Under the pieces are notes generated by a model that saw only the letters and a program-made list of their open reading frames with translations, was not told the origin of the DNA and searched no databases. From Macrostomum lignano (taxonomy: Eukaryota), in the NCBI GenBank assembly GCA_002269645.1, contig NIVC01001848.1:124001-188000 (forward strand): DNA of 64,000 bases. The letters are read 5' to 3'. The position numbers and the translations under genes were made by a program. Of the stretch, positions 15,076 to 62,361 are shown in pieces; positions within the stretch are counted from its first letter, which is position 1; each line of letters begins with the position of its first letter.

Positions 15076-15605
15076 ATGTTCTCGCCGCACAGTCACTCCG
15101 GCTTCCATCAGGCCACGGTGTCGAAGTGCCTGCTGGCCACCGTGGTGGTGTCGACCATCCTCCTCAGCCTGCCCCTTCACGCCTATCGCAATTATTTCAT
15201 CAACGCTAGCAAGGCATCCCCAGCCTATACTTACGTCACCTCCAAGCTGGTGTTCCTCGACACCAAAGACCTCATCCCCGGCGCTCTGCTGCTCTATTAT
15301 TTTCGAATATTCGAACGACGCTACGGTCAGAGAAAATTCTGCGCCTTCCTATTGTTTAGCCTGGCCTGCGGCCTGGCCCTGGAGGCCCTGGTCTTCAGCT
15401 TGCTGCAGGCCTGGGTGGGGGGCCTGGGGTCGCCCTGCGGCCCTGTGGCTCTGGTCTTCTCGCTGTTTGTGCCGTTCTACGTTGAGGTGAGGGGCTCTGG
15501 CACCTGACTGACTGACTGACTGACTGACTGCCTGACTGACTGAATGACTGACTGACTGACTGACTGACTGTCTGACTGACTGACTGACTGACTGACTGAC
15601 TGACT

Positions 15606-15648
<43 letters not shown>

Positions 15649-18517: not shown

Positions 18518-18602
18518 GACAGGCAGGCAGACAGACACTAAGACAGACAGACAGACAGACTCTAAGACAGACAGACAGACATACAGACAAACATACAGAT
18601 AC

Positions 18603-18644
<42 letters not shown>

Positions 18645-18660
18645 GGATAGACGGACAGGC

Positions 18661-18696
<36 letters not shown>

Positions 18697-18744
18697 GGAT
18701 AGACGGACAGACAGACAGAGGGATAGACGGACAGGCAGGCAGGC

Positions 18745-18787
<43 letters not shown>

Positions 18788-18904
18788 TAGACGGACAGGC
18801 AGGCAGGCAGACAGACAGACAGACAGGCAGACAGACAGACAGACGGATAGACGGACAGGCAGGCAGACAGACAGACAGACAGACGGATAGACGGACAGGC
18901 AGGC

Positions 18905-18936
<32 letters not shown>

Positions 18937-18982
18937 GGATAGACGGACAGGCAGGCAGACAGACAGAAAGACAGACAAACAG
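18518..18982. repeat. Compound (GACA)n microsatellite
   Basis: GACA/GGCA units with a recurring cggatagacggacagg interruption. Confidence 0.95.
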
Positions 18983-27800: not shown

Positions 27801-30800
27801 AGGAGCAGACAGGCAGGGGGCTGACAGGCAGGGGGCTGACAGGCAGGGGATACAGGCATGGGGCAAACAGGCAGGGGGCTGACAGGCATGGGGCAGACAG
27901 GCAGGGGGCTGACAGGCAGGGGGCAGACAGGCATGGGGCAGACAGGCAAGGGATACAGGCAGGGGCAGACAGGCAGGGGCTGACAGGCATGGGGCAGACA
28001 GGCAGGGGGCTGACAGGCATGGGGCAGACAGGCAGGGGATACAGGCATGGGGCAGACGGGCAGGGGGCAGACAGGCAGGGGATACAGGCATGGGGCAGAC
28101 AGGCAGGGGGCTGACAGGCATGGGGCAGACAGGCAGGGGGCTGACAGGCAGGGGGCAGACAGGCATGGGGCAGACAGGCATGGGGCAGACAGGCAGGGGG
28201 CTGACAGGCAGGGGGCTGACAGGCAGGGGATACAGGCATGGGGCAGACAGGCAGGGGGCTGACAGGCATGGGGCAGACAGGCAGGGGCTGACAGGCAGGG
28301 GGCAGACAGGCATGGGGCAGACAGGCAAGGGATACAGGCAGGGGCAGACAGGCAGGGGCTGACAGGCATGGGGCAGACAGGCAGGGGGCTGACAGGCATG
28401 GGGCAGACAGGCATGGGGCAGACAGGCAGGGGGCTGACAGGCAGGGGGCTGACAGGCAGGGGATACAGGCATGGGGCAGACAGGCAGGGGGCTGACAGGC
28501 ATGGGGCAGACAGGCAGGGGGCAGACAGGCATGGGGCAGACAGGCAAGGGATACAGGCAGGGGCAGAAAGGCAGGGGGCTGACAGGCATGGGGCAGACAG
28601 GCAGGGGGCAGACAGGCAGGGGGCTGACAGGCAGGGGGCTGACAGGCAGGGGATACAGGCATGGGGCAGACAGGCAGGGGGCTGACAGGCAGGGGCAGAC
28701 AGGCAGGGGATACAGGCATGAGGCAGACAGGCAGGGGGCAGACAGGCAGGGGATACAGGCATGGGGCAGACAGGCATGGGGCAGACAGGCAAGGGATACA
28801 GGCAGGGGCAGACAGGCAGGGGGCTGACAGGCATGGGGCAGACAGGCAGGGGGCTGACAGGCAGGGGCAGACAGGCAGGGGATACAGGCATGGGGCAGAC
28901 AGGCAGGGGCAGACAGGCAGGGGATACAGGCATGGGGCAGACAGGCAGGGGCTGACAGGCATGGGGCAGACAGGCAGGGGGCTGACAGGCAGGGGGCAGA
29001 CAGGCAGGGGGCTGACAGGCAGGGGGCTGACAGGCAGGGGATACATGCATGGGGCAGACAGGCAGGGGGCTGACAGGCATGGGGCAGACAGGCAGGGGGC
29101 TGACAGGCAGGGGGCAGACAGGCATGGGGCAGACAGGCAAGGGATACAGGCAGGGGCAGACAGGCAGGGGCTGACAGGCAGGGGCAGACAGGCAGGGGAT
29201 ACAGGCATGGGGCTGACAGGCAGGGGATACAGGCATGGGGCAGACAGGCAGGGGCTGACAGGCATGGGGCAGACAGGCATGGGGCAGACAGGCAGGGGGC
29301 TGACAGGCAGGGGGCTGACAGGCAGGGGATACAGGCATGGGGCAGACAGGCAGGGGCTGACAGGCATGGGGCAGACAGGCAGGGGGCTGACAGGCAGGGG
29401 GCAGAAAGGCATGGGGCAGACAGGCAAGGGATACAGGCAGGGGCAGACAGGCAGGGGCTGACAGGCATGGGGCAGACAGGCAGGGGGCTGACAGGCAGGG
29501 CAGACAGGCAGGGGATACAGGCATGGGGCAGACAGGCAGGGGGCAGACAGGCAGGGGATACAGGCATGGGGCAGACAGGCAGGGGCAGAAAGGCAAGGGA
29601 TACAGGCAGGGGCAGACAGGCAGGGGGCTGACAGGCATGGGGCAGACAGGCAGGGGGCTGACAGGCAGGGGCAGACAGGCAGGGGATACAGGCATGGGGC
29701 AGACAGGCAGGGGGCAGACAGGCAGGGGCTGACAGGCAGGGGGCAGACAGGCAGGGGCTGACAGGCAGGGGGCAGACAGGCATGGGGCAGACAGGCAAGG
29801 GATACAGGCAGGGGCAGACAGGCAGGGGGCTGACAGGCATGGGGCAGACAGGCAGTGGGCTGACAGGCAGGGGCAGACAGGCAGGGGATACAGGCATGGG
29901 GCAGACAGGCAGGGGGCTGACAGGCATGGGGCAGACAGGCAGGGGGCAGACAGGCATGGGGCAGACAGGCAGGGGCTGACAGGCAGGGGCTGACAGGCAG
30001 GGGATACAGGCATGGGGCAGACAGGCAGGGGGCTGACAGGCATGGGGCAGACAGGCAGGGGGCTGACAGGCAGGGGCAGACAGGCATGGGGCAGACAGGC
30101 AAGGGATACAGGCAGGGGCAGACAGGCAGGGGGCTGACAGGCATGGGGCAGACAGGCAGGGGCTGACAGGCAGGGGATACAGGCATGGGGCAGAAGGCAG
30201 GGGGCAGACAGGCAGGGGCAGACAGGCAGGGGGCTGACAGGCAGGGGGCAGACAGGCATGGGGCAGACAGGCAGGGGCTGACAGGCAGGGGCTGACAGGC
30301 AGGGATACAGGCATGGGGCAGACAGGCAGGGGGCTGACAGGCATGGGGCAGACAGGCAGGGGCTGACAGGCAGGGGCAGACAGGCATGGGGCTGACAGGC
30401 AGGGGCTGACAGGCAGGGGATACAGGCATGGGGCAGACAGGCAGGGGGCTGACAGGCATGGGATACAGGCAGGAGCAGACAGGCAGGGGGCTGACAGGCA
30501 TGGGGCAGACAGGCAGGGGGCTGACAGGCAGGGGCTGACAGGCAGGGGATACAGGCATGGGGCAAACAGGCAGGGGCTGACAGGCATGGGGCAGACAGGC
30601 AGGGGCTGACAGGCAGGGGGCAGACAGGCATGGGGCAGACAGGCAAGGGATACAGGCAGGGGCAGACAGGCATGGGGTACACAGGCATGGGGCAGACAGG
30701 CAGGGGGCTGACAGGCAGGGGGCTGACAGGCAGGGGATACAGGCATGGGGCAGACAGGCAGGGGGCTGACAGGCATGGGGCAGACAGGCATGGGGCAGAC

Positions 30801-33800
30801 AGGCAGGGGATACAGGCATGGGGCAGACAGGCAGGGGGCTGACAGGCATGGGGCAGACAGGCAGGGGGCTGACAGGCAGGGGGCAGACAGGCATGGGGCA
30901 GACAGGCAAGGGATACAGGCAGGGGCAGACAGGCAGGGGGCTGACAGGCATGGGGCAGACAGGCAGGGGGCAGACAGGCAGGGGGCTGACAGGCAGGGGG
31001 CTGACAGGCAGGGGATACAGGCATGGGGCAGACAGGCAGGGGGCTGACAGGCAGGGGACACAGGCATGGGGCAGACAGGCATGGGGCAGACAGGCAAGGG
31101 ATACAGGCAGGGGCAGACAGGCAGGGGGCTGACAGGCATGGGGCAGACAGGCAGGGGCTGACAGGCAGGGGCAGACAGGCAGGGGATACAGGCATGGGGC
31201 AGACAGGCAGGGGCAGACAGGCAGGGGATACAGGCATGGGGCAGACAGGCAGGGGGCTGACAGGCATGGGCAGACAGGCAGGGGGCTGACAGGCAGGGGG
31301 CAGACAGGCATGGGGCAGACAGGCAAGGGATACAGGCAGGGGCAGACAGGCAGGGGGCTGACAGGCAGGGGCAGACAGGCATGGGGCAGACAGGCAGGGG
31401 CTGACAGGCAGGGGATACAGGCATGGGGCAGACAGGCAGGGGCTGACAGGCATGGGATACAGGCAGGAGCAGACAGGCAGGGGGCTGACAGGCATGGGCA
31501 GACAGGCAGGGGCTGACAGGCAGGAGGCTGGCAGGCAGGGGATACAGGCATGGGGCAAACAGGCAGGGGGCTGACAGGCATGGGGCAGACAGGCAGGATG
31601 CTGACAGGCAGGGGGCAGACAGGCATGGGGCAGACAGGCAAGGGATACAGGCAGGGGCAGACAGGCAGGGGATACAGGCATGGGGCTGACAGGCAGGGGA
31701 TACAGGCATGGGGCAGACAGGCAGGGGGGCTGACAGGCATGGGGCAGACAGGCAGGGGGCTGACAGGCAGGGGGCAGACAGGCATGGGGCAGACAGGCAA
31801 GGGATACAGGCAGGGGCAGACAGGCAGGGGGCTGACAGGCATGGGGCAGACAGGCAGGGGCTGACAGGCATGGGGCAGACAGGCAGGGGGCTGACAGGCA
31901 GGGGATACAGGCATGGGGCAGACAGGCAGGGGGCTGACAGGCATGGGATACAGGCAGGTGCAGACAGGCAGGGGGCTGACAGGCATGGGGCAGACAGGCA
32001 GGGGCTGACAGGCAGGAGGCTGGCAGGCAGGGATACAGGCATGGGGCAAACAGGCAGGGGGCTGACAGGCATGGGGCAGACAGGCAGGGGGCTGACAGGC
32101 AGGGGGCAGACAGGCATGGGGCAGACAGGCAGGGGATACAGGCATGGGGCAGACAGGCAGGGGGCTGACAGGCATGGGGCAGACAGGCATGGGGCAGACA
32201 GGCAGGGGATACAGGCATGGGGCAGACAGGCAGGGGGCTGACAGGCATGGGCAGACAGGCAGGGGGCTGACAGGCAGGGGCAGACAGGCATGGGGCAGAC
32301 AGGCAAGGGATACAGGCAGGGGCAGACAGGCAGGGGGCTGACAGGCATGGGGCAGACAGGCAGGGGCAGACAGGCAGGGGGCTGACAGGCAGGGGGCTGA
32401 CAGGCAGGGGATACAGGCATGGGGCAGACAGGCAGGGGGCTGACAGGCAGGGGACACAGGCATGGGGCAGACAGGCATGGGGCAGACAGGCAAGGGATAC
32501 AGGCAGGGGCAGACAGGCAGGGGCTGACAGGCATGGGGCAGACAGGCAGGGGGCTGACAGGCAGGGGCAGACAGGCAGGGGATACAGGCATGGGGCAGAC
32601 AGGCAGGGGCAGACAGGCAGGGGATACAGGCATGGGGCAGACAGGCAGGGGGCTGACAGGCATGGGGCAGACAGGCAGGGGGCTGACAGGCAGGGGCAGA
32701 CAGGCATGGGGCAGACAGGCAAGGGATACAGGCAGGGGCAGACAGGCAGGGGGCTGACAGGCAGGGGCAGACAGGCATGGGGCAGACAGGCAGGGGCTGA
32801 CAGGCAGGGGATACAGGCATGGGGCAGACAGGCAGGGGGCTGACAGGCATGGGATACAGGCAGGAGCAGACAGGCAGGGGGCTGACAGGCATGGGGCAGA
32901 CAGGCAGGGGGCTGACAGGCAGGAGGCTGGCAGGCAGGGGATACAGGCATGGGGCAAACAGGCAGGGGGCTGACAGGCATGGGGCAGACAGGCAGGATGC
33001 TGACAGGCAGGGGGCAGACAGGCATGGGGCAGACAGGCAAGGGATACAGGCAGGGGCAGACAGGCAGGGGATACAGGCATGGGGCTGACAGGCAGGGGAT
33101 ACAGGCATGGGGCAGACAGGCAGGGGGCTGACAGGCATGGGGCAGACAGGCAGGGGGCTGACAGGCAGGGGCAGACAGGCATGGGGCAGACAGGCAAGGG
33201 ATACAGGCAGGGGCAGACAGGCAGGGGGCTGACAGGCATGGGGCAGACAGGCAGGGGGCTGACAGGCATGGGGCAGACAGGCAGGGGGCTGACAGGCAGG
33301 GGATACAGGCATGGGGCAGACAGGCAGGGGCTGACAGGCATGGGATACAGGCAGGTGCAGACAGGCAGGGGGCTGACAGGCATGGGGCAGACAGGCAGGG
33401 GGCTGACAGGCAGGAGGCTGGCAGGCAGGGGATACAGGCATGGGGCAAACAGGCAGGGGGCTGACAGGCATGGGGCAGACAGGCAGGGGGCTGACAGGCA
33501 GGGGCAGACAGGCATGGGGCAGACAGGCAAGGGATACAGGCAGGGGCAGACAGGCAGGGGCTGACAGGCATGGGGCAGACAGGCAGGGGGCTGACAGGCA
33601 TGGGGCAGACAGGCAGGGGGCTGACAGGCAGGGGCAGACAGGCAAGGGATACAGGCAGGGGCAGACAGGCAGGGGCAGACAGGCAAGGGATACAGGCATG
33701 GGGCAGACAGGCAAGGGATTCAGGCAGGGGCAGACAGGCAAGGGATACAGGCAGGGGCAGACAGGCAAGGGATACAGGTAGGGGCAGACAGGCAAGGGAT

Positions 33801-36800
33801 ACAGGCAGGGGCAGACAGGCAAGGGATATAGGCAGGGGCAGACAGGCAAGGGATACAGGCAGGGGCAGACAGGCAAGGGATACAGGTAGGGGCAGACAGG
33901 CAGGGGCAGACAGGCAGGGGCAGACAGGCAAGGGATACAGGCAGGGGCAGACAGGCAAGGGATACAGGCAGGGGCAGACAGGCAAGGGATACAGGCAGGG
34001 GCAGACAGGCAAGGGATACAGGTAGGGGCAGACAGGCATGGGGCAGACAGGCAGGGGCAGACAGGCAGGGGCAGACAGGCAGGGGCAGACAGGCAAGGGA
34101 TACAGGCAGGGGCAGACAGGCAAGGGGCAGACAGGCAGGGGCAGACAGGCAGGGGCAGACAGGCAGGGGCAGACAGGCAGGGGCAGACAGGCAAGGGATA
34201 CAGGCAGGGGCAGACAGGCAAGGGATACAGGTAGGGGCAGACAGGCATGGGGCAGACAGGCAGGGGCAGACAGGCAGGGGCAGACAGGCAAGGGATACAG
34301 GCAGGGGCAGACAGGCAAGGGATACAGGCAGGGGCAGACAGGCAAGGGATACAGGTAGGGGCAGACAGGCATGGGGCAGACAGGCAGGGGCAGACAGGCA
34401 GGGGCAGACAGGCAGGGGCAGACAGGCAAGGGATACAGGCAGGGGCAGACAGGCAGGGGCAGACAGGCAAGGGGCATACAGGCAGGGGCAGACAGGCAGG
34501 GGCAGACAGGCAGGGGCAGACAGGCAGGGGCAGACAGGCAAGGGATACAGGCAGGGGCAGACAGGCAAGGGATACAGGCAGGGGCAGACAGGCAAGGGAT
34601 ACAGGCAGGGGCAGACAGGCAAGGGATACAGGCAGGGGAAGACAGGCAGGGGGCTGACAGGCATGGGGCAGACAGGCAGGGGGCTGACAGGCATGGGGCA
34701 GACAGGCAGGGGGCTGACAGGCAGGGGATACAGGCATGGGGCAGACAGGCAGGGGCTGACAGGCATGGGATACAGGCAGGAGCAGACAGGCAGGGGCTGA
34801 CAAGCATGGGGCAGACAGGCAGGGGGCTGACAGGCAGGAGGCTGGCAGGCAGGGGATACAGGCATGGGGCAAACAGGCAGGGGCTGACAGGCATGGGCAG
34901 ACAGGCAGGGGGCTGACAGGCAGGGGGCAGACAGGCATGGGCAGACAGGCAAGGGATACAGGCAGGGGCAGACAGGCAGGGGCTGACAGGCATGGGGCAG
35001 ACAGGCAGGGGCTGACAGGCATGGGGCAGACAGGCAGGGGCTGACAGGCAGGGGGCAGACAGGCAAGGGATACAGGCAGAGGCAGACAGGCAGGGGCAGA
35101 CAGGCAAGGGATACAGGCATGGGGCAGACAGGCAAGGGATTCAGGCAGGGGCAGACAGGCAAGGGATACAGGCTGGGGCAGACAGGCAAGGGATACAGGT
35201 AGGGGCAGACAGGCAAGGGATACAGGCAGGGGCAGACAGGCAAGGGATACAGGCAGGGGCAGACAGGCAAGGGATACAGGCAGGGGCAGACAGGCAAGGG
35301 ATACAGGTAGGGGCAGACAGGCATGGGGCAGACAGGCAGGGGCAGACAGGCAGGGGCAGACAGGCAAGGGATACAGGCATGGGGCAGACAGGCAAGGGAT
35401 TCAGGCAGGGGCAGACAGGCAAGGGATACAGGCATGGGGCAAACAGGCAGGGGGCTGACAGGCATGGGGCAGACAGGCAGGTGGCTGACAGGCAGGGGGC
35501 AGACAGGCATGGGGCAGACAGGCAAGGGATACAGGCAGGGGCAGACAGGCATGGGGCAGACAGGCATGGGGCAGACAGGCAGGTGGCTGACAGGCAGGGG
35601 CTGACAGGCAGGGGATACAGGCATGGGGCAGACAGGCAGGGGGCTGACAGGCATGGGGCAGACAGGCATGGGGCAGACAGGCAGGGGATACAGGCATGGG
35701 GCAGACAGGCAGGGGCTGACAGGCATGGGGCAGACAGGCAGGGGGCTGACAGGCAGGGGGCAGACAGGCATGGGGCAGACAGGCAAGGGATACAGGCAGG
35801 GGCAGACAGGCAGGGGGCTGACAGGCAGGGGCAGACAGGCATGGGGCAGACAGGCAGGGGGCTGACAGGCAGGGGATACAGGCATGGGGCAGACAGGCAG
35901 GGGGCTGACAGGCATGGGATACAGGCAGGAGCAGACAGGCAGGGGGCTGACAGGCATGGGGCAGACAGGCAGGGGGCTGACAGGCAGGAGGCTGGCAGGC
36001 AGGGGATACAGGCATGGGGCAAACAGGCAGGGGGCTGACAGGCATGGGGCAGACAGGCAGGATGCTGACAGGCAGGGGCAGACAGGCATGGGCAGACAGG
36101 CAAGGGATACAGGCAGGGGCAGACAGGCAGGGGATACAGGCATGGGGCTGACAGGCAGGGGATACAGGCATGGGGCAGACAGGCAGGGGGCTGACAGGCA
36201 TGGGGCAGACAGGCAGGGGGCTGACAGGCAGGGGGCAGACAGGCATGGGGCAGACAGGCAAGGGATACAGGCAGGGGCAGACAGGCAGGGGGCTGACAGG
36301 CATGGGGCAGACAGGCAGGGGGCTGACAGGCATGGGGCAGACAGGCAGGGGGCTGACAGGCAGGGGATACAGGCATGGGGCAGACAGGCAGGGGGCTGAC
36401 AGGCATGGGATACAGGCAGGTGCAGACAGGCAGGGGGCTGACAGGCATGGGGCAGACAGGCAGGGGGCTGACAGGCAGGAGGCTGGCAGGCAGGGGATAC
36501 AGGCATGGGGCAAACAGGCAGGGGCTGACAGGCATGGGGCAGACAGGCAGGGGCTGACAGGCAGGGGGCAGACAGGCATGGGGCAGACAGGCAAGGGATA
36601 CAGGCAGGGGCAGACAGGCAGGGGGCTGACAGGCATGGGGCAGACAGGCAGGGGGCTGACAGGCATGGGGCAGACAGGCAGGGGCTGACAGGCAGGGGGC
36701 AGACAGGCAAGGGATACAGGCAGGGGCAGACAGGCAGGGGCAGACAGGCAAGGGATACAGGCATGGGGCAGACAGGCAAGGGATTCAGGCAGGGGCAGAC

Positions 36801-39800
36801 AGGCAAGGGATACAGGCAGGGGCAGACAGGCAAGGGATACAGGTAGGGGCAGACAGGCAAGGGATACAGGCAGGGGCAGACAGGCAAGGGATATAGGCAG
36901 GGGCAGACAGGCAAGGGATACAGGCAGGGGCAGACAGGCAAGGGATACAGGTAGGGGCAGACAGGCAGGGGCAGACAGGCAGGGGCAGACAGGCAAGGGA
37001 TACAGGCAGGGGCAGACAGGCAAGGGATACAGGCAGGGGCAGACAGGCAAGGGATACAGGCAGGGGCAGACAGGCAAGGGATACAGGTAGGGGCAGACAG
37101 GCATGGGGCAGACAGGCAGGGGCAGACAGGCAGGGGCAGACAGGCAGGGGCAGACAGGCAAGGGATACAGGCAGGGGCAGACAGGCAAGGGGCAGACAGG
37201 CAGGGGCAGACAGGCAGGGGCAGACAGGCAGGGGCAGACAGGCAGGGGCAGACAGGCAAGGGATACAGGCAGGGGCAGACAGGCAAGGGATACAGGTAGG
37301 GGCAGACAGGCATGGGGCAGACAGGCAGGGGCAGACAGGCAGGGGCAGACAGGCAAGGGATACAGGCAGGGGCAGACAGGCAAGGGATACAGGCAGGGGC
37401 AGACAGGCAAGGGATACAGGTAGGGGCAGACAGGCATGGGGCAGACAGGCAGGGGCAGACAGGCAGGGGCAGACAGGCAGGGGCAGACAGGCAAGGGATA
37501 CAGGCAGGGGCAGACAGGCAGGGGCAGACAGGCAAGGGGCATACAGGCAGGGGCAGACAGGCAGGGGCAGACAGGCAGGGGCAGACAGGCAGGGGCAGAC
37601 AGGCAAGGGATACAGGCAGGGGCAGACAGGCAAGGGATACAGGCAGGGGCAGACAGGCAAGGGATACAGGCAGGGGCAGACAGGCAAGGGATACAGGCAG
37701 GGGAAGACAGGCAGGGGGCTGACAGGCATGGGGCAGACAGGCAGGGGGCTGACAGGCATGGGGCAGACAGGCAGGGGGCTGACAGGCAGGGGATACAGGC
37801 ATGGGGCAGACAGGCAGGGGGCTGACAGGCATGGGATACAGGCAGGAGCAGACAGGCAGGGGGCTGACAAGCATGGGGCAGACAGGCAGGGGGCTGACAG
37901 GCAGGAGGCTGGCAGGCAGGGGATACAGGCATGGGGCAAACAGGCAGGGGGCTGACAGGCATGGGGCAGACAGGCAGGGGGCTGACAGGCAGGGGGCAGA
38001 CAGGCATGGGGCAGACAGGCAAGGGATACAGGCAGGGGCAGACAGGCAGGGGGCTGACAGGCATGGGGCAGACAGGCAGGGGGCTGACAGGCATGGGGCA
38101 GACAGGCAGGGGCTGACAGGCAGGGGGCAGACAGGCAAGGGATACAGGCAGAGGCAGACAGGCAGGGGCAGACAGGCAAGGGATACAGGCATGGGGCAGA
38201 CAGGCAAGGGATTCAGGCAGGGGCAGACAGGCAAGGGATACAGGCTGGGGCAGACAGGCAAGGGATACAGGTAGGGGCAGACAGGCAAGGGATACAGGCA
38301 GGGGCAGACAGGCAAGGGATACAGGCAGGGGCAGACAGGCAAGGGATACAGGCAGGGGCAGACAGGCAAGGGATACAGGTAGGGGCAGACAGGCATGGGG
38401 CAGACAGGCAGGGGCAGACAGGCAGGGGCAGACAGGCAAGGGATACAGGCATGGGGCAGACAGGCAAGGGATTCAGGCAGGGGCAGACAGGCAAGGGATA
38501 CAGGCATGGGGCAAACAGGCAGGGGGCTGACAGGCATGGGGCAGACAGGCAGGTGGCTGACAGGCAGGGGGCAGACAGGCATGGGGCAGACAGGCAAGGG
38601 ATACAGGCAGGGGCAGACAGGCATGGGGCAGACAGGCATGGGGCAGACAGGCAGGTGGCTGACAGGCAGGGGGCTGACAGGCAGGGGATACAGGCATGGG
38701 GCAGACAGGCAGGGGGCTGACAGGCATGGGGCAGACAGGCATGGGGCAGACAGGCAGGGGATACAGGCATGGGGCAGACAGGCAGGGGGCTGACAGGCAT
38801 GGGGCAGACAGGCAGGGGGCTGACAGGCAGGGGGCAGACAGGCATGGGGCAGACAGGCAAGGGATACAGGCAGGGGCAGACAGGCAGGGGGCTGACAGGC
38901 ATGGGGCAGACAGGCAGGGGGCAGACAGGCAGGGGCTGACAGGCAGGGGGCTGACAGGCAGGGGATACAGGCATGGGGCAGACAGGCAGGGGCTGACAGG
39001 CAGGGGATACAGGCATGGGGCAGACAGGCATGGGGCAGACAGGCAAGGGATACAGGCAGGGGCAGACAGGCAGGGGGCTGACAGGCATGGGGCAGACAGG
39101 CAGGGGGCTGACAGGCAGGGGCAGACAGGCAGGGGATACAGGCATGGGGCAGACAGGCAGGGGATACAGGCATGGGGCAGACAGGCAGGGGGCTGACAGG
39201 CATGGGGCAGACAGGCAGGGGGCTGACAGGCAGGGGCAGACAGGCATGGGGCAGACAGGCAAGGGATACAGGCAGGGGCAGACAGGCAGGGGGCTGACAG
39301 GCAGGGGCAGACAGGCAGGGGATACAGGCATGGGGCTGACAGGCAGGGGATACAGGCATGGGGCAGACAGGCAGGGGGCTGACAGGCATGGGGCAGACAG
39401 GCAGGGGCTGACAGGCAGGGGGCAGACAGGCATGGGGCAGACAGGCAAGGGATACAGGCAGGGGCAGACAGGCAGGGGGCTGACAGGCATGGGGCAGACA
39501 GGCAGGGGGCTGACAGGCATGGGGCAGACAGGCAGGGGGCTGACAGGCAGGGGATACAGGCATGGGGCAGACAGGCAGGGGGCTGACAGGCATGGGATAC
39601 AGGCAGGTGCAGACAGGCAGGGGGCTGACAGGCATGGGGCAGACAGGCAGGGGGCTGACAGGCAGGAGGCTGGCAGGCAGGGGATACAGGCATGGGGCAA
39701 ACAGGCAGGGGGCTGACAGGCATGGGGCAGACAGGCAGGGGGCTGACAGGCAGGGGCAGACAGGCAGGGGCAGACAGGCAAGGGATACAGGCAGGGGCAG

Positions 39801-42427
39801 ACAGGCAAGGGATACAGGCAGGGGCAGACAGGCAAGGGATACAGGTAGGGGCAGACAGGCATGGGGCAGACAGGCAGGGGCAGACAGGCAGGGGCAGACA
39901 GGCAGGGGCAGACAGGCAAGGGATACAGGCAGGGGCAGACAGGCAGGGGCAGACAGGCAAGGGGCATACAGGCAGGGGCAGACAGGCAGGGGCAGACAGG
40001 CAGGGGCAGACAGGCAGGGGCAGACAGGCAAGGGATACAGGCAGGGGCAGACAGGCAAGGGATACAGGCAGGGGCAGACAGGCAAGGGATACAGGCAGGG
40101 GCAGACAGGCAAGGGATACAGGCAGGGGAAGACAGGCAGGGGCTGACAGGCATGGGGCAGACAGGCAGGGGGCTGACAGGCATGGGGCAGACAGGCAGGG
40201 GGCTGACAGGCAGGGGATACAGGCATGGGGCAGACAGGCAGGGGGCTGACAGGCATGGGATACAGGCAGGGGCAGACAGGCAGGGGGCTGACAGGCATGG
40301 GGCAGACAGGCAGGGGGCTGACAGGCAGGGGCAGACAGGCAGGGGGCAGACAGGCAGGGGCTGACAGGCAGGGGGCTGACAGGCAGGGGATACAGGCATG
40401 GGGCAGACAGGCAGGGGGCTGACAGGCAGGGGATACAGGCATGGGGCAGACAGGCATGGGGCAGACAGGCAAGGGATACAGGCAGGGGCAGACAGGCAGG
40501 GGGCTGACAGGCATGGGGCAGACAGGCAGGGGGCTGACAGGCAGGGGCAGACAGGCAGGGATACAGGCATGGGGCAGACAGGCAGGGGATACAGGCATGG
40601 GGCAGACAGGCAGGGGGCTGACAGGCATGGGGCAGACAGGCAGGGGGCTGACAGGCAGGGGCAGACAGGCATGGGGCAGACAGGCAAGGGATACAGGCAG
40701 GGGCAGACAGGCAGGGGGCTGACAGGCAGGGGCAGACAGGCAGGGGATACAGGCATGGGGCTGACAGGCAGGGGATACAGGCATGGGGCAGACAGGCAGG
40801 GGGGCTGACAGGCATGGGGCAGACAGGCAGGGGGCTGACAGGCAGGGGCAGACAGGCATGGGGCAGACAGGCAAGGGATACAGGCAGGGGCAGACAGGCA
40901 GGGGGCTGACAGGCATGGGGCAGACAGGCAGGGGGCTGACAGGCATGGGGCAGACAGGCAGGGGGCTGACAGGCAGGGGATACAGGCATGGGGCAGACAG
41001 GCAGGGGCTGACAGGCATGGGATACAGGCAGGTGCAGACAGGCAGGGGGCTGACAGGCATGGGGCAGACAGGCAGGGGGCTGACAGGCAGGAGGCTGGCA
41101 GGCAGGGGATACAGGCATGGGGCAAACAGGCAGGGGGCTGACAGGCATGGGGCAGACAGGCAGGGGGCTGACAGGCAGGGGCAGACAGGCAGGGGCAGAC
41201 AGGCAAGGGATACAGGCAGGGGCAGACAGGCAAGGGATACAGGCAGGGGCAGACAGGCAAGGGATACAGGTAGGGGCAGACAGGCATGGGGCAGACAGGC
41301 AGGGGCAGACAGGCAGGGGCAGACAGGCAGGGGCAGACAGGCAAGGGATACAGGCAGGGGCAGACAGGCAGGGGCAGACAGGCAAGGGGCATACAGGCAG
41401 GGGCAGACAGGCAGGGGCAGACAGGCAGGGGCAGACAGGCAGGGGCAGACAGGCAAGGGATACAGGCAGGGGCAGACAGGCAAGGGATACAGGCAGGGGC
41501 AGACAGGCAAGGGATACAGGCAGGGGCAGACAGGCAAGGGATACAGGCAGGGGAAGACAGGCAGGGGGCTGACAGGCATGGGGCAGACAGGCAGGGGCTG
41601 ACAGGCATGGGGCAGACAGGCAGGGGCTGACAGGCAGGGGATACAGGCATGGGGCAGACAGGCAGGGGCTGACAGGCATGGGATACAGGCAGGAGCAGAC
41701 AGGCAGGGGGCTGACAAGCATGGGGCAGACAGGCAGGGGGCTGACAGGCAGGAGGCTGGCAGGCAGGGGATACAGGCATGGGGCAAACAGGCAGGGGGCT
41801 GACAGGCATGGGGCAGACAGGCAGGGGGCTGACAGGCAGGGGCAGACAGGCATGGGGCAGACAGGCAAGGGATACAGGCAGGGGCAGACAGGCAGGGGGC
41901 TGACAGGCATGGGGCAGACAGGCAGGGGGCTGACAGGCATGGGGCAGACAGGCAGGGGGCTGACAGGCAGGGGATACAGGCATGGGGCAGACAGGCAGGG
42001 GGCTGACAGGCATGGGATACAGGCAGGTGCAGACAGGCAGGGGGCTGACAGGCATGGGGCAGACAGGCAGGGGGCTGACAGGCAGGAGGCTGGCAGGCAG
42101 GGGATACAGGCATGGGGCAAACAGGCAGGGGCTGACAGGCATGGGGCAGACAGGCAGGGGGCTGACAGGCAGGGGGCAGACAGGCATGGGGCAGACAGGC
42201 AAGGGATACAGGCAGGGGCAGACAGGCAGGGGGCTGACAGGCATGGGGCAGACAGGCAGGGGCAGACAGGCAAGGGATACAGGCAGGGGCAGACAGGCAG
42301 GGGCAGACAGGCAAGGGGCAGACAGGCAGGGGCAGACAGGCAGGGGCAGACAGGCAGGGGCAGACAGGCAAGGGATACAGGCAGGGGCAGACAGGCATGG
42401 GGCAGACAGGCATGGGGCAGACAGGCA
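24897..42427. repeat. ~17.5-kb G-rich complex satellite (gacaggcagggg/gacaggcatggggca/gacaggcaagggata monomers) with higher-order duplications
   Basis: Continuous 11-15-bp related monomers. The first ~430 bp is a 33-bp unit. Rare markers recur at ~3.07-kb and 1.425-kb spacings. Confidence 0.97.
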
Positions 42428-51243: not shown

Positions 51244-54200
51244 ATGGCCTCCGCAGTCTTCGGCGAGCAAGTGGACAGTCGCCGCCGGCTCCCGGTGCGG
51301 CCGATCCTCATCAGCGCTCCCTCTCAGCCAGCCGAAGGCGAGGAGCCGTCGCAGCCACCGCAGCCGTCGCAGCTGCTGCAGCGTCAGCACCGCCAGTCGA
51401 TGTCCCAGGAGGCGCTGAAAATGGACGACTTCGACCTCTACTGCCGCATCGCCAACAGCCCGGCCAGCATGGGCAACAGCAGCCCGCTGCACAGCCCGGC
51501 TGGCTCGGCCATTGCCAAGGTGGACGAGTGGATTCGCAGCCTGGCCGGCCACGAGCTGGAGGCGCCTGACTTGTCCGGCCCCGGCCAGCAGCAGCCGCAG
51601 CAGCAGGGGGGCTTCCTGCGCGTGGAGCAGCCCGGCGGTTGCCGCATCAACAGGTACCGGTCCAAGTCGCACCGGCTGCGCCGGGAGCGCCACACGATGC
51701 TGCCAGCCTCGTCTGCAGCTGCCGCAGTTGCCCCGGCGGCCAGCCTAGGCGACAGCCTTCGCCGGCCGCGGCTGGGCAGCGCGGGGGGCGCAGAGGCCGC
51801 AGCAGCGGGCGCAGCAGCGACGGCGCCTGAGCCTCCGACGGAGACCCTGGTCCGGGTGCGCAGCTTCAGGCGGACCAAGCGCGGCCTGGTGAACCAAGGT
51901 GAGAAAGTGAAATGAATGTGACAGGGATATGATGGGGATATGACAGGGATATGATAGGGATATGATAGGGATATGATAGGGAGATGATAGGGATATGATA
52001 GGGATATGATAGGGATATGATAGGGAGATGATAGGGATATGATAGGGATATGATAGGGATATGATAGGGATATGATGGGGATATGACAGGGATATGATAG
52101 GGATATGATAGGGATATGATAGGGATATGATAGGATATGATGGGGATGTGATGGGATATGATAGGGATATGATAGGGATATGATAGGGATATGATGGGAT
52201 ATGATAGGGATATGATAGGGATGTGATGGGATATGATAGGGATAGGATGGGATATGATAGGGATATGATAGGGATATGATAGGGATATGATGGGATGTGA
52301 TGGGATATGATAGGGATATGATGGGATATGATGGGGATAGAATGGGATATGATAGGGATAGGATGGGATATGATAGGGATATGATGGGATATGATAGGGA
52401 TATGATGGGATATGATAGGGATATGATGGGATATGATAGGGATATGATGGGATATGATAGGGATATGATGGGATATGATAGGGATATGATGGGATATGAT
52501 GGGGATAGAATGGGATATGATAGGGATAGGATGGGATATGATAGGGATATGATGGGATATGATAGGGATATGCGGGCACGGGTTGTCCGCACTGGCTTAC
52601 GTGTGGAGTGGAAAAAAGACTTACCATTAAAAGTGCACATGAACTCCTGTCAATCCGAAGGCGACGCCACGGCCGTCGTCAAGGGCGCCCGCAGCAGCTG
52701 CAGCCTGCACAGTTCGGCTGCCAGCAGCGACCCGGAGCTCCGGCTGCATCAGCAGCAGCAGCAGCAGCAGCAGCAGCAATTTCTGCAACCAATCGATCCT
52801 CGTTTTATCGGACGGCGGCCCAGCTCAGCTGACCGAGATCACCGGTCCGCCTCGCCGCTGCCGCCACTGCCGCCCACCGGCCCGTCGCCTTCGCACGGGC
52901 CCGGCGGCTGCACGCGGCTCTGCCGGCGCTCCTGCCGGGTGCAGGTGGTCGGCGCGCCGCGCGTCGGCAAAACGTCGCTGTGCGCGCAGTTTCTGTCATC
53001 TGAGAGTCACGCGCTGAATGCGGCGGGTGAGCTGGCGGGTGGGGGGATCTGAAGGCCTCCTTCGCAACCTGGTCAGAAACAAAAACTTCATAACCCGAAA
53101 CCTAATATGAACCCGAAACCTAATATGAACCCGAAACCTAATATGAACCCGAAGCCTAATATGAACCCTAAACCGAACAAAAACCCGAAACCGAAAAAAA
53201 ACCCGAAACCTAATTTGAACCCGAAACCTAATATGAAGCCAAAACCTGATGTGAACCCGAAACCTAATAATAACCCGAAACCTAATAAGAACCCGAAACC
53301 TAACATGAACCCGAAACCTAATAATAACCCGAAACCTAATATGAACCCGAAACCTAATAAGAACCCGAAACATCGATATAGGGATAAACATCGTTACTAA
53401 ACCAAGTAAAAACTTAAAGTATAGCTTTAGAGCTTCAAAGCTACAGCTTCAAAGAAAAATGTTTTATAGAAACATTTATAAAATCATTGAAAGCATTCTC
53501 ATTGGCTACTAACAGTAGAATTGTGAGTTTTTGCTTTCGCCTCTTTTCGCAGCCGATATGCATTAATTTTTCTAATAAACCCACAGAAGATGAGCACGCT
53601 GACGTTACGGACGGCGAATCCAAAGAGCGCTACGTTACGGTGCTGCTGGACGGCGACGAGTATCACGTGACTTTCCTGGACACCGAGGGCCCAGAACTGG
53701 TAATGTACATTCCAGTACTAGTGACTTAGAGTTAAAGTACTTTACAATACCGATGCACTATGGCCTACCATGATTTTGTAGGGCGTGTACATCCTGGACG
53801 TTGACGCGTACATGGTAGTCTTTGCCATAGACAATAGACGCTCCTTCAACGCGGCCAAGCAAGTGCTGAACGAGCTGGTCAGCGAGGCTCGCAAAGCCTC
53901 CGCTCTGATTCTGGTGGCTAATAAAGCCGACCTGGTCAGGAACAAAGAGGTCACGCACGAAGGTGAGTGGTAGAGCTTGTTGATTCAGAAATAATCTTAT
54001 ATTCTTTACAAACACTCAAGACTAGTCTCTAAACTGACTCAGGACACCCACCTCACTCCAGACGCCCACCTCACTCCAGACACCCACCTCACTCCAGACA
54101 CCCACCTCACTCCAGACACCCACCTCACTCCAGACACCCACCTCACTCCAGACACCCACCTCACTCCAGACACCCACCTCACTCCAGACACCCACCTCAC

Positions 54201-54577
54201 TCCAGACACCCACCTCACTCTATACAACCACCTCACTCCAGACGCCCACCTCAAAATCAAAGATAAAACTCACCCACTATTTGCATCCAACAGAGGCCAA
54301 GAACTTGGCCGCAGTTTACGGCGCAATGTTCATGGAGGTGTCAACGGCGCTGCACCACCAGGTGGACGAGCTGTTGGTCGGCACGCTGAGCCAGGTTCAA
54401 GCCCGGCAGCGCCGTATGCAGAAGGAGAAAGAGAAGCTGCTCTGCTTGGAGCGGGATGGCGGCCGGGGACTGCGGGCCTCCCTAAGGCTGCGCTCGCCAA
54501 GGCGCATGGTTGGCGCCTTCATCAAGAAGCACTTCTCATCTAGGTCGTGCGAGAACCTCGACAAGGAGACCGCTTAA
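51244..54577 (+). CDS. Rgk: RGK-family (Rad/Rem/Gem-Kir-like) small GTPase with a long low-complexity N-terminus, 5 exons, ~532 aa
   Basis: Exons 51244-51898, 52661-53026, 53587-53699, 53782-53962 and 54294-54577 (1599 nt, phases 1,1,0,1, all GT-AG). Motifs: VRVRSFRRTKRGLVNQGD, P-loop GAPRVGKT, ILVANKADLVR (G4), EVSTALHHQVDELL (G5), and a basic C-terminal extension ending SRSCENL. Confidence 0.9.
51915..52572. repeat. 11-bp (atatgataggg) array grading into a 21-bp dimer (atatgatgggatatgataggg), RGK intron 1
   Basis: Read directly from the sequence; the 7-aa MMGYDRD periodicity lies in the 3' half. Confidence 0.93.
53091..53372. repeat. 18-bp minisatellite (aacccgaaacctaatatg), ~15 copies, RGK intron 2
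   Basis: MNPKPN periodicity in the ORF track. Confidence 0.92.
54044..54253. repeat. 18-bp minisatellite (cacccacctcactccaga), ~11 copies, RGK intron 4
   Basis: Tandem units read directly from the sequence. Confidence 0.93.
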
Positions 54578-55212: not shown

Positions 55213-55511
55213 TATTTCCATATTTAGTTCGTGCACATTTCAATCGCATTCAATTTTTTCAAAAGATCTTTAACCTAAAAATTATTCCTTAATAATAATG
55301 ATAACGGTTAGTAACCTTCTCTAACAAAATATTCTGTATTTGCTGATCTCACTAAACGGATGAACTGCAGAAATTTGCTTTACAACTTTGGCTGTTTTTA
55401 ATAATATTCCATAGTTCGATAACAATATGATACTGATTGCACCAGAGGCTACCTTTTCTAATGATGCGATTATTTGTGCTTGACAAAATGTTTTAGTTTA
55501 CGTATTAAATA

Positions 55512-55550
55512 CAAGGACTTCTAGACTAACTTCTAGTCTAGAAGTCCTTG
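55512..55550. mobile_element. 39-bp minimal hAT-like element (17-bp perfect TIRs, 5-bp spacer, 8-bp TSD)
   Basis: attaaata|caaggacttctagacta-acttc-tagtctagaagtccttg|attaaata. Confidence 0.75.
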
Positions 55551-56497
55551 ATTAAATATTAAGTAAAGAAGTAAAGCTATTGTGAAAATTCTACCGTTCG
55601 TATTATATTGCGCACTGTAAATATTCAATTTTGTTGTGTTTCTATTGTCCTTGTTTATTCAGAAAAGCAAGACAGTTTTTTGCAAAAATAAAAACCCGGA
55701 ACATTTTTAACTATTTGCATTGTCTGCTGATTTTTCGAAATTAAAAGCTTCTTCAAATGCCTTTAAACTGCCCCAAATTGCTCCAAATTATATTAGCGCA
55801 GGGCAGTCGGGCCGCACATCTCTTCCTCCAAATTGCAATTTCATCGACCTTGCTCTCGTGAGCCATCTTTTTTTGGCAATCACTTTTTAATCCACTTTCT
55901 GTTCTCAGGGCTTTGTCTTCCGGCTTTGTTTCCCCGAGAATCACGAGCCCTCCGCGAACAATAGATCCGTGGGTGGGGGTTGCCGAGCCAACTGGTATCC
56001 AAACCTTTCATTTGATGCTTTTTGTAGCCTAGTCGCTGTTTTGCCTTGGCGTCTTGGTGACCGTTTCGTCTGCAGCCTCTCCCAGCCAGCCTAGGCCGGA
56101 TCGGGTTGGTGTAAGAGATTTTTGTGGAGTCGAAAGTGCCTTATTGTAGCTCTGGAATGGTTCGATTGAATCTGTTTGCTAAGGCTGGGGCCACAGGCAG
56201 ATGCTAATCTCCTGCTTCTCAGTGTCCCCGCTGCTGTGGAGGAGGAAAGCGAAAAATCCCGTCCGGAAATATCCCATCTCTCACAGTCGGGAGCTCAATG
56301 CAGATATTGCAATCCGCTCCCACTGGCTGACTATCCCTGTGTCAGGGACATTTTCAGCTGTCCGTGACATTTTCATTCGGATTCCGCTGCCGCTGATCTG
56401 GGAACTGGATATAGATCAGGGCTGAGTGTTTGCCGAACAAATTACATGCTGTGCTCAATGTATGCTGCTGAGTCTGCAATATGAATGCGGAATTTGC

Positions 56498-57401
56498 CAG
56501 TCAGTCAGTCAGTCAGTCAGTCAGTCAGTCAGTCAGTCAGTCAGTCAGTCAGTCAGTCAGTCAGTCAGTCAGTCAGTCAGTCAGTCAGTCAGTCAGTCAG
56601 TCAGTCAGTCAGTCAGTCAGTCAGTCAGTCAGTCAGTCAGTCAGTCAGTCAGTCAGTCAGTCAGTCAGTCAGTCAGTCAGTCAGTCAGTCAGTCAGTCAG
56701 TCAGTCAGTCAGTCAGTCAGTCAGTCAGTCAGTCAGTCAGTCAGTCAGTCAGTCAGTCAGTCAGTCAGTCAGTCAGTCAGTCAGTCAGTCAGTCAGTCAG
56801 TCAGTCAGTCAGTCAGTCAGTCAGTCAGTCAGTCAGTCAGTCAGTCAGTCAGTCAGTCAGTCAGTCAGTCAGTCAGTCAGTCAGTCAGTCAGTCAGTCAG
56901 TCAGTCAGTCAGTCAGTCAGTCAGTCAGTCAGTCAGTCAGTCAGTCAGTCAGTCAGTCAGTCAGTCAGTCAGTCAGTCAGTCAGTCAGTCAGTCAGTCAG
57001 TCAGTCAGTCAGTCAGTCAGTCAGTCAGTCAGTCAGTCAGTCAGTCAGTCAGTCAGTCAGTCAGTCAGTCAGTCAGTCAGTCAGTCAGTCAGTCAGTCAG
57101 TCAGTCAGTCAGTCAGTCAGTCAGTCAGTCAGTCAGTCAGTCAGTCAGTCAGTCAGTCAGTCAGTCAGTCAGTCAGTCAGTCAGTCAGTCAGTCAGTCAG
57201 TCAGTCAGTCAGTCAGTCAGTCAGTCAGTCAGTCAGTCAGTCAGTCAGTCAGTCAGTCAGTCAGTCAGTCAGTCAGTCAGTCAGTCAGTCAGTCAGTCAG
57301 TCAGTCAGTCAGTCAGTCAGTCAGTCAGTCAGTCAGTCAGTCAGTCAGTCAGTCAGTCAGTCAGTCAGTCAGTCAGTCAGTCAGTCAGTCAGTCAGTCAG
57401 T
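56498..57401. repeat. Pure (CAGT)n microsatellite, ~226 copies
   Basis: No visible interruptions over ~904 bp. Confidence 0.97.
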
Positions 57402-58562: not shown

Positions 58563-59813
58563 ATGCTTCGAATACCCCGGATAAACCGAGTGGTGCCGCG
58601 GCCGGTTGTCCGCTTCGTCTGCCTGCTGGCCGCCGCCGCCGCCGTCCGCCTGCTGCTGGTCGATCGGCTGCCCTGGGCGAAGCTGTTGCCACTGCCGCCA
58701 GAGTCGGGCCAAACGCAGCAGCAGCTGTTGAATCTGTCGACGAAGTCATCCCTGCCGCAGTCAACGCAGCAGCGTCAGCAGCTTGAGCCGCTGCCCCGCC
58801 TGATCCACGTGACGGCGCACAACGAGATGCTCCGCGTCGAGTACCGGCCGGTGCTGCGCCAGTGGATGCTCGCCCAGCCCGAGCTGCAGCTCCGGCTCTG
58901 GCGCGACGTCGACGCTGACTGCCTCCTTCGGCTGAGCTACCCGGATCTGCTCAGCGGCTACCGGACCAGCCTGCAGACTCCGCTGGAGCGCTCCGACCTG
59001 ATTCGCATCTTGGCCCTGCACAGCATGGGCGGCATGTACCTGGACCTGGACACCGAGCCAGTGAGGAACATCAGCCACCTGTTCAGCAGCCCGCTGGCCG
59101 GCGCCATGATCGCCCTGGAGCCCGAGGAGCACGCCGTGCTGCTGTACAACCGGCCCAGCCTGCTGTCAAACGCGGTGATGCTGTCAGCGCCGAGGCATCC
59201 GTTTTATCTGTTCTACGCGGGACACATATTTGACAATTTGAGCAAGCAGCAGCAGCTGCAGCAGGGGCGGCGGCGGCTGGTGAGGCGTCTCAGGCGGAGG
59301 AACAATTACGCGGCGCCGCAGATCACTGGCCCGCTGGTGCTGCAGTCTGCCTACGAGGCCTACGCGGCCAGGGAGCACTGCAAGGCCGACGAGGATCCGC
59401 AGCGCTGCCAGGTGTACCTGTTCGAGCCGGAGGTGTTCAGCCCGCGCTTCGACCTCAGCCAGCGGTCCAACTTCCGGAAGACCTGTATGCGCTGGCGTCG
59501 GCGCCTTCAACAGCAGCGGCGACGGCGCCAGCAGGTGACCAGCAGCGCCATGGACGAGCGCAAAACCGCCGTGTGCAAACGGCTGGCCGCTCGCGGCTTC
59601 ACAGTCGGCTCCAACTCGAATGCCACTCTGGCTGTGCACCTGTTCCGCCACCTGACAACCTCAGGCGGTGGTGGCAAGCAGTCTCGGGGTCGGCTGAAGA
59701 AGCCGAAGCCGCCGGCTCGCCAGCAGGAGACGGTGTTCAACGCCACCGTCGAGTTTCCCCGGATGCTGATGCTCGCCCGCGAGCTGGGGTCCAAGTGCCG
59801 CGGGCCGGCGTAG
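58563..59813 (+). CDS. Intronless GT32-type (DXD sugar-binding, OCH1/SUR1-like) glycosyltransferase, type II membrane protein, 416 aa
   Basis: N-terminal hydrophobic anchor (FVCLLAAAAAVRLLLV) and motifs PRLIH, LW.D.D, ERSDLIRILALHSMGGMYLDLD, ALEPEEH, LSNAVMLSAPRHPF and TGPLVL. An in-frame stop at 58527-58529 fixes the start. GC-rich codon usage resembles the other exons. Confidence 0.88.
   Translation: MLRIPRINRVVPRPVVRFVCLLAAAAAVRLLLVDRLPWAKLLPLPPESGQTQQQLLNLSTKSSLPQSTQQRQQLEPLPRLIHVTAHNEMLRVEYRPVLRQWMLAQPELQLRLWRDVDADCLLRLSYPDLLSGYRTSLQTPLERSDLIRILALHSMGGMYLDLDTEPVRNISHLFSSPLAGAMIALEPEEHAVLLYNRPSLLSNAVMLSAPRHPFYLFYAGHIFDNLSKQQQLQQGRRRLVRRLRRRNNYAAPQITGPLVLQSAYEAYAAREHCKADEDPQRCQVYLFEPEVFSPRFDLSQRSNFRKTCMRWRRRLQQQRRRRQQVTSSAMDERKTAVCKRLAARGFTVGSNSNATLAVHLFRHLTTSGGGGKQSRGRLKKPKPPARQQETVFNATVEFPRMLMLARELGSKCRGPA

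Positions 59814-61225: not shown

Positions 61226-62361
<1,136 letters not shown>

What the first reader, a model, noticed from the sequence alone, without database searches (positions are those of the whole stretch)
55504..55558. A 39-bp transposon: perfect 17-bp TIRs, 5-bp loop and exact 8-bp TSD
The structure is TSD-TIR-5 nt-TIR-TSD with no mismatches. An 8-bp TSD and CAAGG termini fit the hAT superfamily (established). The element is far smaller than typical MITEs and has no room for subterminal transposase-binding sites. It is either an extreme deletion derivative formed in place or an ultra-minimal mobile element. A similar motif (cagggtttctagaaacttcta) occurs at ~750.
Basis: partly seen in the sequence, partly recalled or inferred. 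Interest (0 to 1): 0.7.

Follow-up and report, generated by a model that had tools for sequence, protein, structure and literature searches.

The report
Transposon excision scar, not a mini-transposon
The 55-bp structure is real and comes from a transposon, but it most likely marks the spot a cut-and-paste DNA transposon jumped out of in the flatworm Macrostomum lignano, and is not a 39-bp element that can itself move.

Summary
ATTAAATA (55504-55511), CAAGGACTTCTAGACTA (55512-55528), ACTTC (55529-55533), the perfect reverse complement of the 17-mer (55534-55550), then ATTAAATA again (55551-55558). The chance expectation for the palindrome and the repeat together is about 1e-9 per window.

The window is Macrostomum lignano. 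The site is intergenic and occurs once in the 64 kb. No relative turned up in the metagenome, prokaryote-genome or viral collections, or in the literature. The M. lignano genome itself could not be searched.

The layout (8-bp duplication, 17 nt, short insert, 17 nt, 8-bp duplication) matches published Drosophila P-element excision junctions. P transposase cuts 17 nt inside each terminal repeat, which leaves 17-nt 3' overhangs on the donor DNA. End joining then adds short inserts copied from nearby sequence.

The 5-nt "loop" looks like such an insert. ACTTC plus the adjoining TAG repeats positions 6-13 of the 17-mer, and only 4 of 1024 possible 5-mers would give this.

My best reading is an immobile, evolutionarily young excision scar of a P-type transposon, or one that cuts like P (about 0.5). 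The rivals are an extreme internal deletion of a hAT-like element (about 0.25) and a truly mobile micro-element (about 0.07). The "similar motif" near 750 is a heat-shock-element cluster and is unrelated.

The parts
55504..55511 (.). Left copy of the 8-bp target-site duplication, ATTAAATA
   Evidence: It is identical to 55551-55558, and the repeat does not extend beyond 8 bp.
55512..55528 (+). Left retained transposon terminus, 17 nt: CAAGGACTTCTAGACTA. Interpreted as the 17-nt 3' overhang left on the donor DNA.
   Evidence: (I1). The arm length equals the 17-nt stagger of P transposase.
55529..55533 (.). 5-nt junction insert ACTTC, interpreted as templated filler from end joining
   Evidence: ACTTC plus the adjoining TAG is an exact copy of ACTTCTAG, positions 6-13 of the 17-mer (D9). 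Only 4 of 1024 possible 5-mers give a copy of 8 nt or more. The mean insert at P{wa} junctions is 5.5 nt, and the inserts are usually templated.
55534..55550 (-). Right retained transposon terminus, 17 nt: the perfect reverse complement of the left one
55551..55558 (.). Right copy of the 8-bp target-site duplication, ATTAAATA

Best explanation
This is an excision footprint, a donor-site scar. A cut-and-paste DNA transposon once inserted at a single ATTAAATA in this intergenic stretch of the Macrostomum lignano genome and duplicated those 8 bp. The element had terminal inverted repeats of at least 17 bp beginning CAAGGACTTCTAGACTA.

Its transposase later cut it out with a long stagger, as Drosophila P transposase does: at the transposon tip on the 3' strand and 17 nt inside the repeat on the 5' strand. 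Each flank was left with a 17-nt 3' overhang of transposon sequence. The two overhangs are identical, not complementary, so alternative end joining joined them.

Before ligation one overhang primed on the other through the 3-nt microhomology CTA:TAG and copied 5 nt (GAAGT, which reads ACTTC on the top strand). The product is duplication-17-5-17-duplication. It is a dead relic and cannot transpose.

Shown: the anatomy, the statistics, that it is single-copy in the window, and the templated nature of the 5-mer. Inferred: the parent element, its superfamily and the repair pathway.
For: (1) Exact 8 / 17 / 5 / 17 / 8 anatomy with no mismatch.

(2) P transposase makes 8-bp duplications and cleaves 17 bp inside the TIR. 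This gives 17-nt 3' extensions (PMC7776569; PMC10983969).

(3) Sequenced P{wa} excision junctions have this same layout. One example is acccagacCATGATGAAATAACATA-TGT-TATGTTATTTCATCATGacccagac, and others carry 6-9-nt inserts between two intact 17-mers. The mean insert is 5.5 nt, and a template can almost always be found in the flanking sequence (PMC2895639).

(4) The 5-mer plus the next 3 nt copies positions 6-13 of the 17-mer, p of about 0.004.

(5) hAT, Transib and MULE cleavage forms hairpins on the flanking DNA and would leave no TIR sequence behind (PMC5499845).

(6) There is one copy in the window and the flanks are unique.

(7) All 50 symmetric positions are intact. This implies a young event, less than about 6% divergence at 95%.
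Against: - No parent element, P/THAP9-type transposase or second copy could be examined, because M. lignano DNA is not in any searchable collection.
- The 17-nt stagger has been shown only for the Drosophila P element. Zebrafish Pdre2 has only 13-bp TIRs.
- If the family's TIR happens to be exactly 17 bp, any tiny deletion derivative would also show 17-bp arms.
Confidence: 0.5

Rival explanations
1. Extreme internal-deletion derivative. A hAT-like element, or one from another family that makes 8-bp duplications, with a 17-bp TIR was cut and the gap was refilled from a sister copy. Synthesis aborted after about 17-22 nt from each end, and the nascent ends were joined at the TAG microhomology. 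Only the two TIRs and 5 nt of subterminal sequence remain. The product is immobile.
For: The 8-bp duplication is observed. From my own recollection, not checked here: the CAAGG terminus fits the hAT consensus YARNG, 17 bp is a normal hAT TIR length, and the T at position 2 of the duplication fits half of the hAT target consensus nTnnnnAn. Microhomology-mediated miniaturisation of DNA transposons is documented (PMC3814204, listed). The ACTTCTAG repeat (D9) could be a subterminal repeat of the parent.
Against: Both deletion endpoints would have to fall within 5 nt of the inner TIR boundaries. The spacer would also have to copy TIR positions 6-10 by coincidence (p about 0.004) or because the parent has a subterminal repeat. 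hAT cleavage leaves no transposon sequence at the donor site, so two very early aborts of repair synthesis are needed. No hAT relative was seen in the window.
Confidence: 0.25
2. Footprint of a transposon from a superfamily other than P whose cleavage chemistry is uncharacterised (for example Merlin, Zisupton or Novosib, recalled as having 8-bp duplications) and which happens to leave a long overhang.
For: The anatomical evidence is the same as for the best explanation. From memory, several superfamilies give 8-bp duplications, and their donor cleavage has not been mapped.
Against: No precedent exists. The only characterised eukaryotic transposase that leaves 17 nt on the donor is P.
Confidence: 0.12
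3. A truly mobile ultra-minimal element (micro-MITE). The 39-mer is moved in trans by a transposase that needs only the 17-bp TIR.
For: The TIRs and duplication are perfect. Nothing in the window excludes further copies elsewhere in the genome.
Against: There is a single copy in 64 kb, even allowing up to 3 mismatches. No copies were found in the metagenome, genome or viral scans. There is no room for the internal transposase-binding sites that P elements carry (Figure 4 legend) or the subterminal repeats that promote transposase binding in the MULE Muta1. That hAT elements also need subterminal sites is my recollection. From memory, 39 bp is also well below known MITE sizes. The spacer looks like a repair insert.
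Confidence: 0.07
4. Not transposon-derived. It could be a functional hairpin (miRNA-like or a regulatory cruciform), a Helitron-end hairpin or an assembly artefact.
For: The hairpin is strong. Rfam gives weak miRNA-like matches.
Against: The Rfam scores are far below gathering thresholds (26.9 against 67.5 bits). From memory, the stem is too short for an animal pre-miRNA. None of these readings explains the exact 8-bp flanking repeat. From memory of Helitron ends, there is no CTRR 3' end nearby and Helitrons make no duplication (sequence). The hairpin holds no canonical heat-shock element by the regular expression of PMC12801592.
Confidence: 0.06

Closest known systems
Drosophila melanogaster P-element excision footprints (end-joining junctions after P{wa} excision; PMC2895639, PMC7776569)
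   Same: Both copies of an 8-bp duplication are kept. Exactly 17 nt of each terminal inverted repeat is kept. A short insert of 0-9 nt (mean 5.5) sits between them and is templated from adjacent sequence. The product is immobile.
   Different: The terminal sequence differs (CAAGGACTTCTAGACTA against CATGATGAAATAACATA) and the phylum differs (Platyhelminthes). The target is AT-rich. No P-type transposase or parent element has been shown in this genome.
hAT-superfamily non-autonomous elements and MITEs
   Same: 8-bp duplication. From memory, the terminus fits YARNG and the TIR length is typical.
   Different: From memory, 39 bp is far smaller than any hAT MITE, and there are no subterminal binding sites. 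It is a single copy here. hAT excision leaves scars made of flanking DNA, not TIR remnants.
Tc1/mariner excision footprints
   Same: The principle is the same: a staggered cut leaves transposon nucleotides at the donor site between the two copies of the duplication.
   Different: From memory, these leave only 2-3 nt per end and have a TA duplication. Here there are 17 nt per end and an 8-bp duplication.
Microhomology-mediated miniaturisation of DNA transposons into MITEs (Aedes Tc1/mariner example, PMC3814204)
   Same: An internal deletion leaves only the ends, joined at microhomology.
   Different: Those products are longer, retain subterminal sequence and went on to amplify. Here only 17+17 nt remain and there is no sign of amplification.

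Membership tests
P superfamily (as an excision footprint of one) | 8-bp target-site duplication | tested here: met
   ATTAAATA on both sides, exactly 8 bp. The 8-bp duplication is documented for P and Pdre2.
P superfamily (as an excision footprint of one) | The donor site retains up to 17 nt of each TIR, because 5' cleavage falls 17 nt inside the repeat | tested here: met
   Both arms are exactly 17 nt. This matches. The match is only consistent with this chemistry. The cleavage itself was not observed.
P superfamily (as an excision footprint of one) | Parent elements with the same termini that encode a THAP / P-type (Tnp_P_element) transposase | not testable with these tools
   M. lignano DNA and gene calls are absent from the searchable collections. 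The window contains no transposase ORF.
hAT superfamily | 8-bp duplication and terminal consensus YARNG | tested here: met
   The 8-bp duplication is present and CAAGG fits YARNG. The consensus is recalled from memory.
hAT superfamily | Target consensus nTnnnnAn | tested here: inconclusive
   In ATTAAATA, T at position 2 fits and T at position 7 does not. The consensus is recalled from memory.
hAT superfamily | Excision through hairpins on the flanking DNA, so scars are made of flanking nucleotides and not of TIR | tested here: not met
   The material between the two duplication copies is transposon terminus. It is not a palindrome of ATTAAATA (mechanism in PMC5499845). This counts only against a hAT footprint, not against a hAT deletion derivative.
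hAT superfamily | Relatives that encode a hAT transposase with the same TIR | not testable with these tools
There are none in the window.
MITE / mobile non-autonomous element | Many copies, each with a different duplication | tested here: not met
   The window holds only the two arms of this one element, even allowing up to 3 mismatches. The 55 + 12 + 6 loci found in the public collections are unrelated single 17-mer matches, mostly one Streptococcus gene. The M. lignano genome itself was not searchable, so this holds only for the data at hand.
Helitron terminal hairpin | Hairpin about 10 nt upstream of a CTRR 3' end, insertion between A and T, no duplication | tested here: not met
   There is no CTRR downstream of the hairpin, and an exact 8-bp duplication is present. 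The defining features are recalled from memory.
microRNA precursor | Match to a curated family at its gathering score | tested here: not met
   The best match is mir-240 at 26.9 bits against a gathering score of 67.5.
Heat-shock element (the link to the ~750 motif) | nnTTCnnGAAnnTTC or its complement (regular expression of PMC12801592) | tested here: not met
   The 39-mer has TTCtaGAC and TTCtaGTC but no three-unit element. The ~750 region has three canonical ones. The similarity between the two is not above the null.

The most novel reading that the evidence does not exclude
The 39-mer is a working, trans-mobilised transposon. It would be the smallest eukaryotic TIR element known, made of nothing but two 17-bp transposase recognition ends and a 5-nt spacer. 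That would mean its transposase needs no subterminal sites.
Probability: 0.07. Interest if true: 0.75.

Novelty: new member of a known kind. Interest (0 to 1): 0.35.

Why it matters
If the scar reading is right, it is sequence-level evidence for two things. A cut-and-paste DNA transposon was active in the M. lignano germline recently. And the unusual 17-nt staggered cleavage, so far shown only for the Drosophila P element, may be shared by a transposase in a flatworm.

That would point to a native and possibly still active transposon-transposase pair in a regeneration model where transgenesis tools are in demand. It would also give a natural example of templated-insertion end joining outside flies and vertebrates.

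If the deletion-derivative reading is right instead, this is an ordinary dead relic. Either way it is not a new class of element.

Tried and rejected
1. More copies or longer relatives in the window. The 17-mer with up to 3 mismatches, a scan for TIRs with an 8-bp duplication and a self-BLAST of the window all found nothing beyond the element itself.

2. Exact 17-mer scans of metagenome, prokaryote-genome and viral contigs. All 73 loci are single chance matches. Most fall in one conserved Streptococcus gene with identical flanks, and none has an inverted partner.

3. Fetching other M. lignano or related contigs through neighbouring proteins. The 416-aa ORF is not on record and has no homologues in the indexed search. 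The CDC50 exon identified the species through a UniRef entry that has no contigs, and the next best hits are 54% identical or less. An empty-site or paralogue comparison was therefore not possible.

4. Literature searches for the terminal sequence on both strands found no papers. Searches for P/THAP9 or hAT elements in Macrostomum or other flatworms found nothing usable.

5. Kinship with the ~750 motif is rejected. That motif is a heat-shock-element cluster, and the alignment score is within the shuffled null.

6. Readings as an ncRNA, a terminator or a Helitron hairpin are rejected.

7. I did not search for P transposase in M. lignano with a remembered query.

Full report
**Observation.** The sequence at 55504-55558 reads ATTAAATA | CAAGGACTTCTAGACTA | ACTTC | TAGTCTAGAAGTCCTTG | ATTAAATA. 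The repeat finder reports arms 55512-55528 and 55534-55550 as 17 nt, 100% complementary, 5 nt apart (I1). My own scan confirms this, and confirms that the flanking direct repeat is exactly 8 bp.

At the window's composition, about 3e-5 perfect inverted repeats with arms of 17 or more and a loop of 10 or less are expected. An 8-bp flanking repeat has a probability of about 2.5e-5. The structure is therefore real and not a chance product. As single-stranded DNA it folds at -17.5 kcal/mol, z = -8.6.

**Context.** The window is eukaryotic and extremely rich in mini- and microsatellites. A CDC50-family exon at 4429-5010 is 100% identical to a UniRef protein of Macrostomum lignano, and the next best hits are 54% or less.

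The feature lies about 930 bp downstream of the last coding ORF of a Ras/RGK-like GTPase gene (ORF 54281-54577, + strand). It lies about 3 kb upstream of a 416-aa DXD glycosyltransferase ORF (58563-59813, + strand). It is therefore intergenic, or possibly in a 3' UTR. The 1.1 kb around it has no other copy in the window.

**Copy number and relatives.**
- The 17-mer occurs nowhere else in the window, even with 3 mismatches.
- A scan for any element with a TIR of 9 bp or more and an exact 8-bp duplication finds only this one.
- Exact scans of the metagenome, prokaryote-genome and viral collections return 73 loci. All are single, unpaired matches, and most fall inside one conserved Streptococcus gene with identical flanks, so they are chance matches.
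- M. lignano DNA is not in the protein-indexed contig collection.
- The terminal sequence appears in no paper in the library.

It remains the decisive step.

**What the anatomy says.** The numbers 8, 17 and 17 are distinctive. P elements make 8-bp duplications. P transposase cleaves the 3' strand at the transposon tip and the 5' strand 17 bp inside the inverted repeat (PMC7776569; PMC10983969). After excision, each donor flank therefore carries a 17-nt 3' overhang of transposon sequence. The two overhangs are identical, not complementary.

Chan, Yu and McVey sequenced such junctions after P{wa} excision (PMC2895639). The uncut ends are written acccagacCATGATGAAATAACATA ... TATGTTATTTCATCATGacccagac, which is duplication + 17 nt ... 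17 nt + duplication. Recovered junctions include both intact 17-mers separated by inserts such as TGT, ACATAA, TATACCG and TGTTATAAC. The mean insert in flies with wild-type polymerase theta alleles is 5.5 nt, and a template can almost always be found in the flanking sequence.

The window feature has exactly this layout: duplication-17-5-17-duplication.

**The 5-nt spacer.** ACTTC followed by TAG, the first three bases of the right arm, repeats ACTTCTAG, positions 6-13 of the 17-mer (D9). Only 4 of the 1024 possible 5-mers would create such a copy of 8 nt or more.

A simple route follows. The 3' end CTA of one overhang pairs with TAG (positions 11-13) of the other. Five nucleotides are copied, giving GAAGT, which reads ACTTC on the top strand. 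The end then dissociates and is joined to the other overhang. This is the synthesis-dependent, polymerase-theta-type end joining described. This step is inferred, not shown.

**Why not hAT as filed.** An 8-bp duplication and a CA... terminus do not separate hAT from P. From memory, CAAGG fits the hAT consensus YARNG, and a 17-bp TIR is typical of hAT, so a hAT parent cannot be excluded.

However, hAT, Transib and MULE transposases free the whole transposon end by forming a hairpin on the flanking DNA. Their scars are built from flanking nucleotides (PMC5499845). A hAT origin would need a different history: gap repair from a sister copy that aborted within about 17-22 nt at both ends. The spacer's match to the TIR would then be a coincidence or a subterminal repeat of the parent. 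That is possible but needs more coincidences, so I give it about 0.25.

**Why not a mobile 39-bp element.** There is no second copy in anything I could search. There is no room for internal binding sites. The spacer looks like a repair product. The reading is not excluded, because the genome was not searchable, so I give it about 0.07.

**Other readings.** Rfam gives only sub-threshold miRNA-like matches that come from the hairpin shape (best 26.9 bits against 67.5). The prokaryote-style terminator match is irrelevant in a flatworm. A Helitron end does not fit, because there is no CTRR and a duplication is present.

Its alignment score to the 39-mer is within the shuffled null. M. lignano is known to carry LTR retrotransposon families with such elements in their LTRs (PMC12801592).

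**Age.** All 34 arm positions and all 16 duplication positions are still symmetric. This bounds the divergence since the event at less than about 6% (95%), and most likely less than 2%. The event is evolutionarily recent.

**Verdict.** The best-supported explanation is an immobile excision scar made by a P-type transposase, or one that cuts like P, followed by templated end joining. I give about 0.5 to the P-type chemistry and about 0.8 to the broader statement that this is a relic formed in place by break repair and not a mobile element.

This is a new instance of a known kind. Its interest lies in hinting at recently active P-like transposition, and a conserved 17-nt stagger, in a flatworm. 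No step had to be referred.

Noticed in passing
window 748-855: Three canonical heat-shock elements (TTCnnGAAnnTTC at 754-766, 792-804 and 817-829) sit just upstream of a TATA box (~842-855). No heat-shock-protein ORF lies downstream. This may be a solo LTR of one of the heat-inducible LTR retrotransposon families described in M. lignano (PMC12801592), or an orphan heat-shock promoter.
   Followed up: partly
window 1608-1757: Foldback or MITE-like palindrome. The arms are 1608-1670 and 1695-1757 (63 nt, 81% complementary), with a perfect 17-bp core (1631-1647 and 1718-1734). CAGCCA directly flanks that core on both sides. It has no sequence similarity to the 39-mer.
   Followed up: partly
window 25306-42427: A 17-kb uninterrupted array (about 1200 copies) of a G-rich unit of about 15 bp, CAGGCAGGGGCAGA. 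It is 67% GC with strong strand asymmetry and could form G-quadruplexes.
   Followed up: no
window 56498-57401, 15504-16115, 18518-18982 and 61226-62361: Long tetranucleotide arrays occur in inverted pairs. A perfect (CAGT)x226 is matched by a (CTGA)n array 41 kb away, and (GACA)n by (GTCT)n. About 40 further minisatellite arrays fill most of the intergenic space.
   Followed up: no
window 58563-59813 (+): A 416-aa single-exon ORF with a DXD glycosyltransferase domain (Gly_transf_sug, E = 3e-8). It has no detectable homologue in the word-indexed search of 5.8 billion proteins. The sub-threshold TcdA_TcdB match (E = 0.0014, below the cut-off) is generic similarity around the DXD motif.
   Followed up: partly
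window 3743-5013, 15037-16674 and 51244-54577: Host genes on the + strand: CDC50/TMEM30A (100% identical to a M. lignano UniRef entry), a protein with a C-terminal UBA domain, and a Ras/RGK-like GTPase with a long low-complexity N-terminal region. Exons are large, and tandem repeats lie between them.
   Followed up: partly
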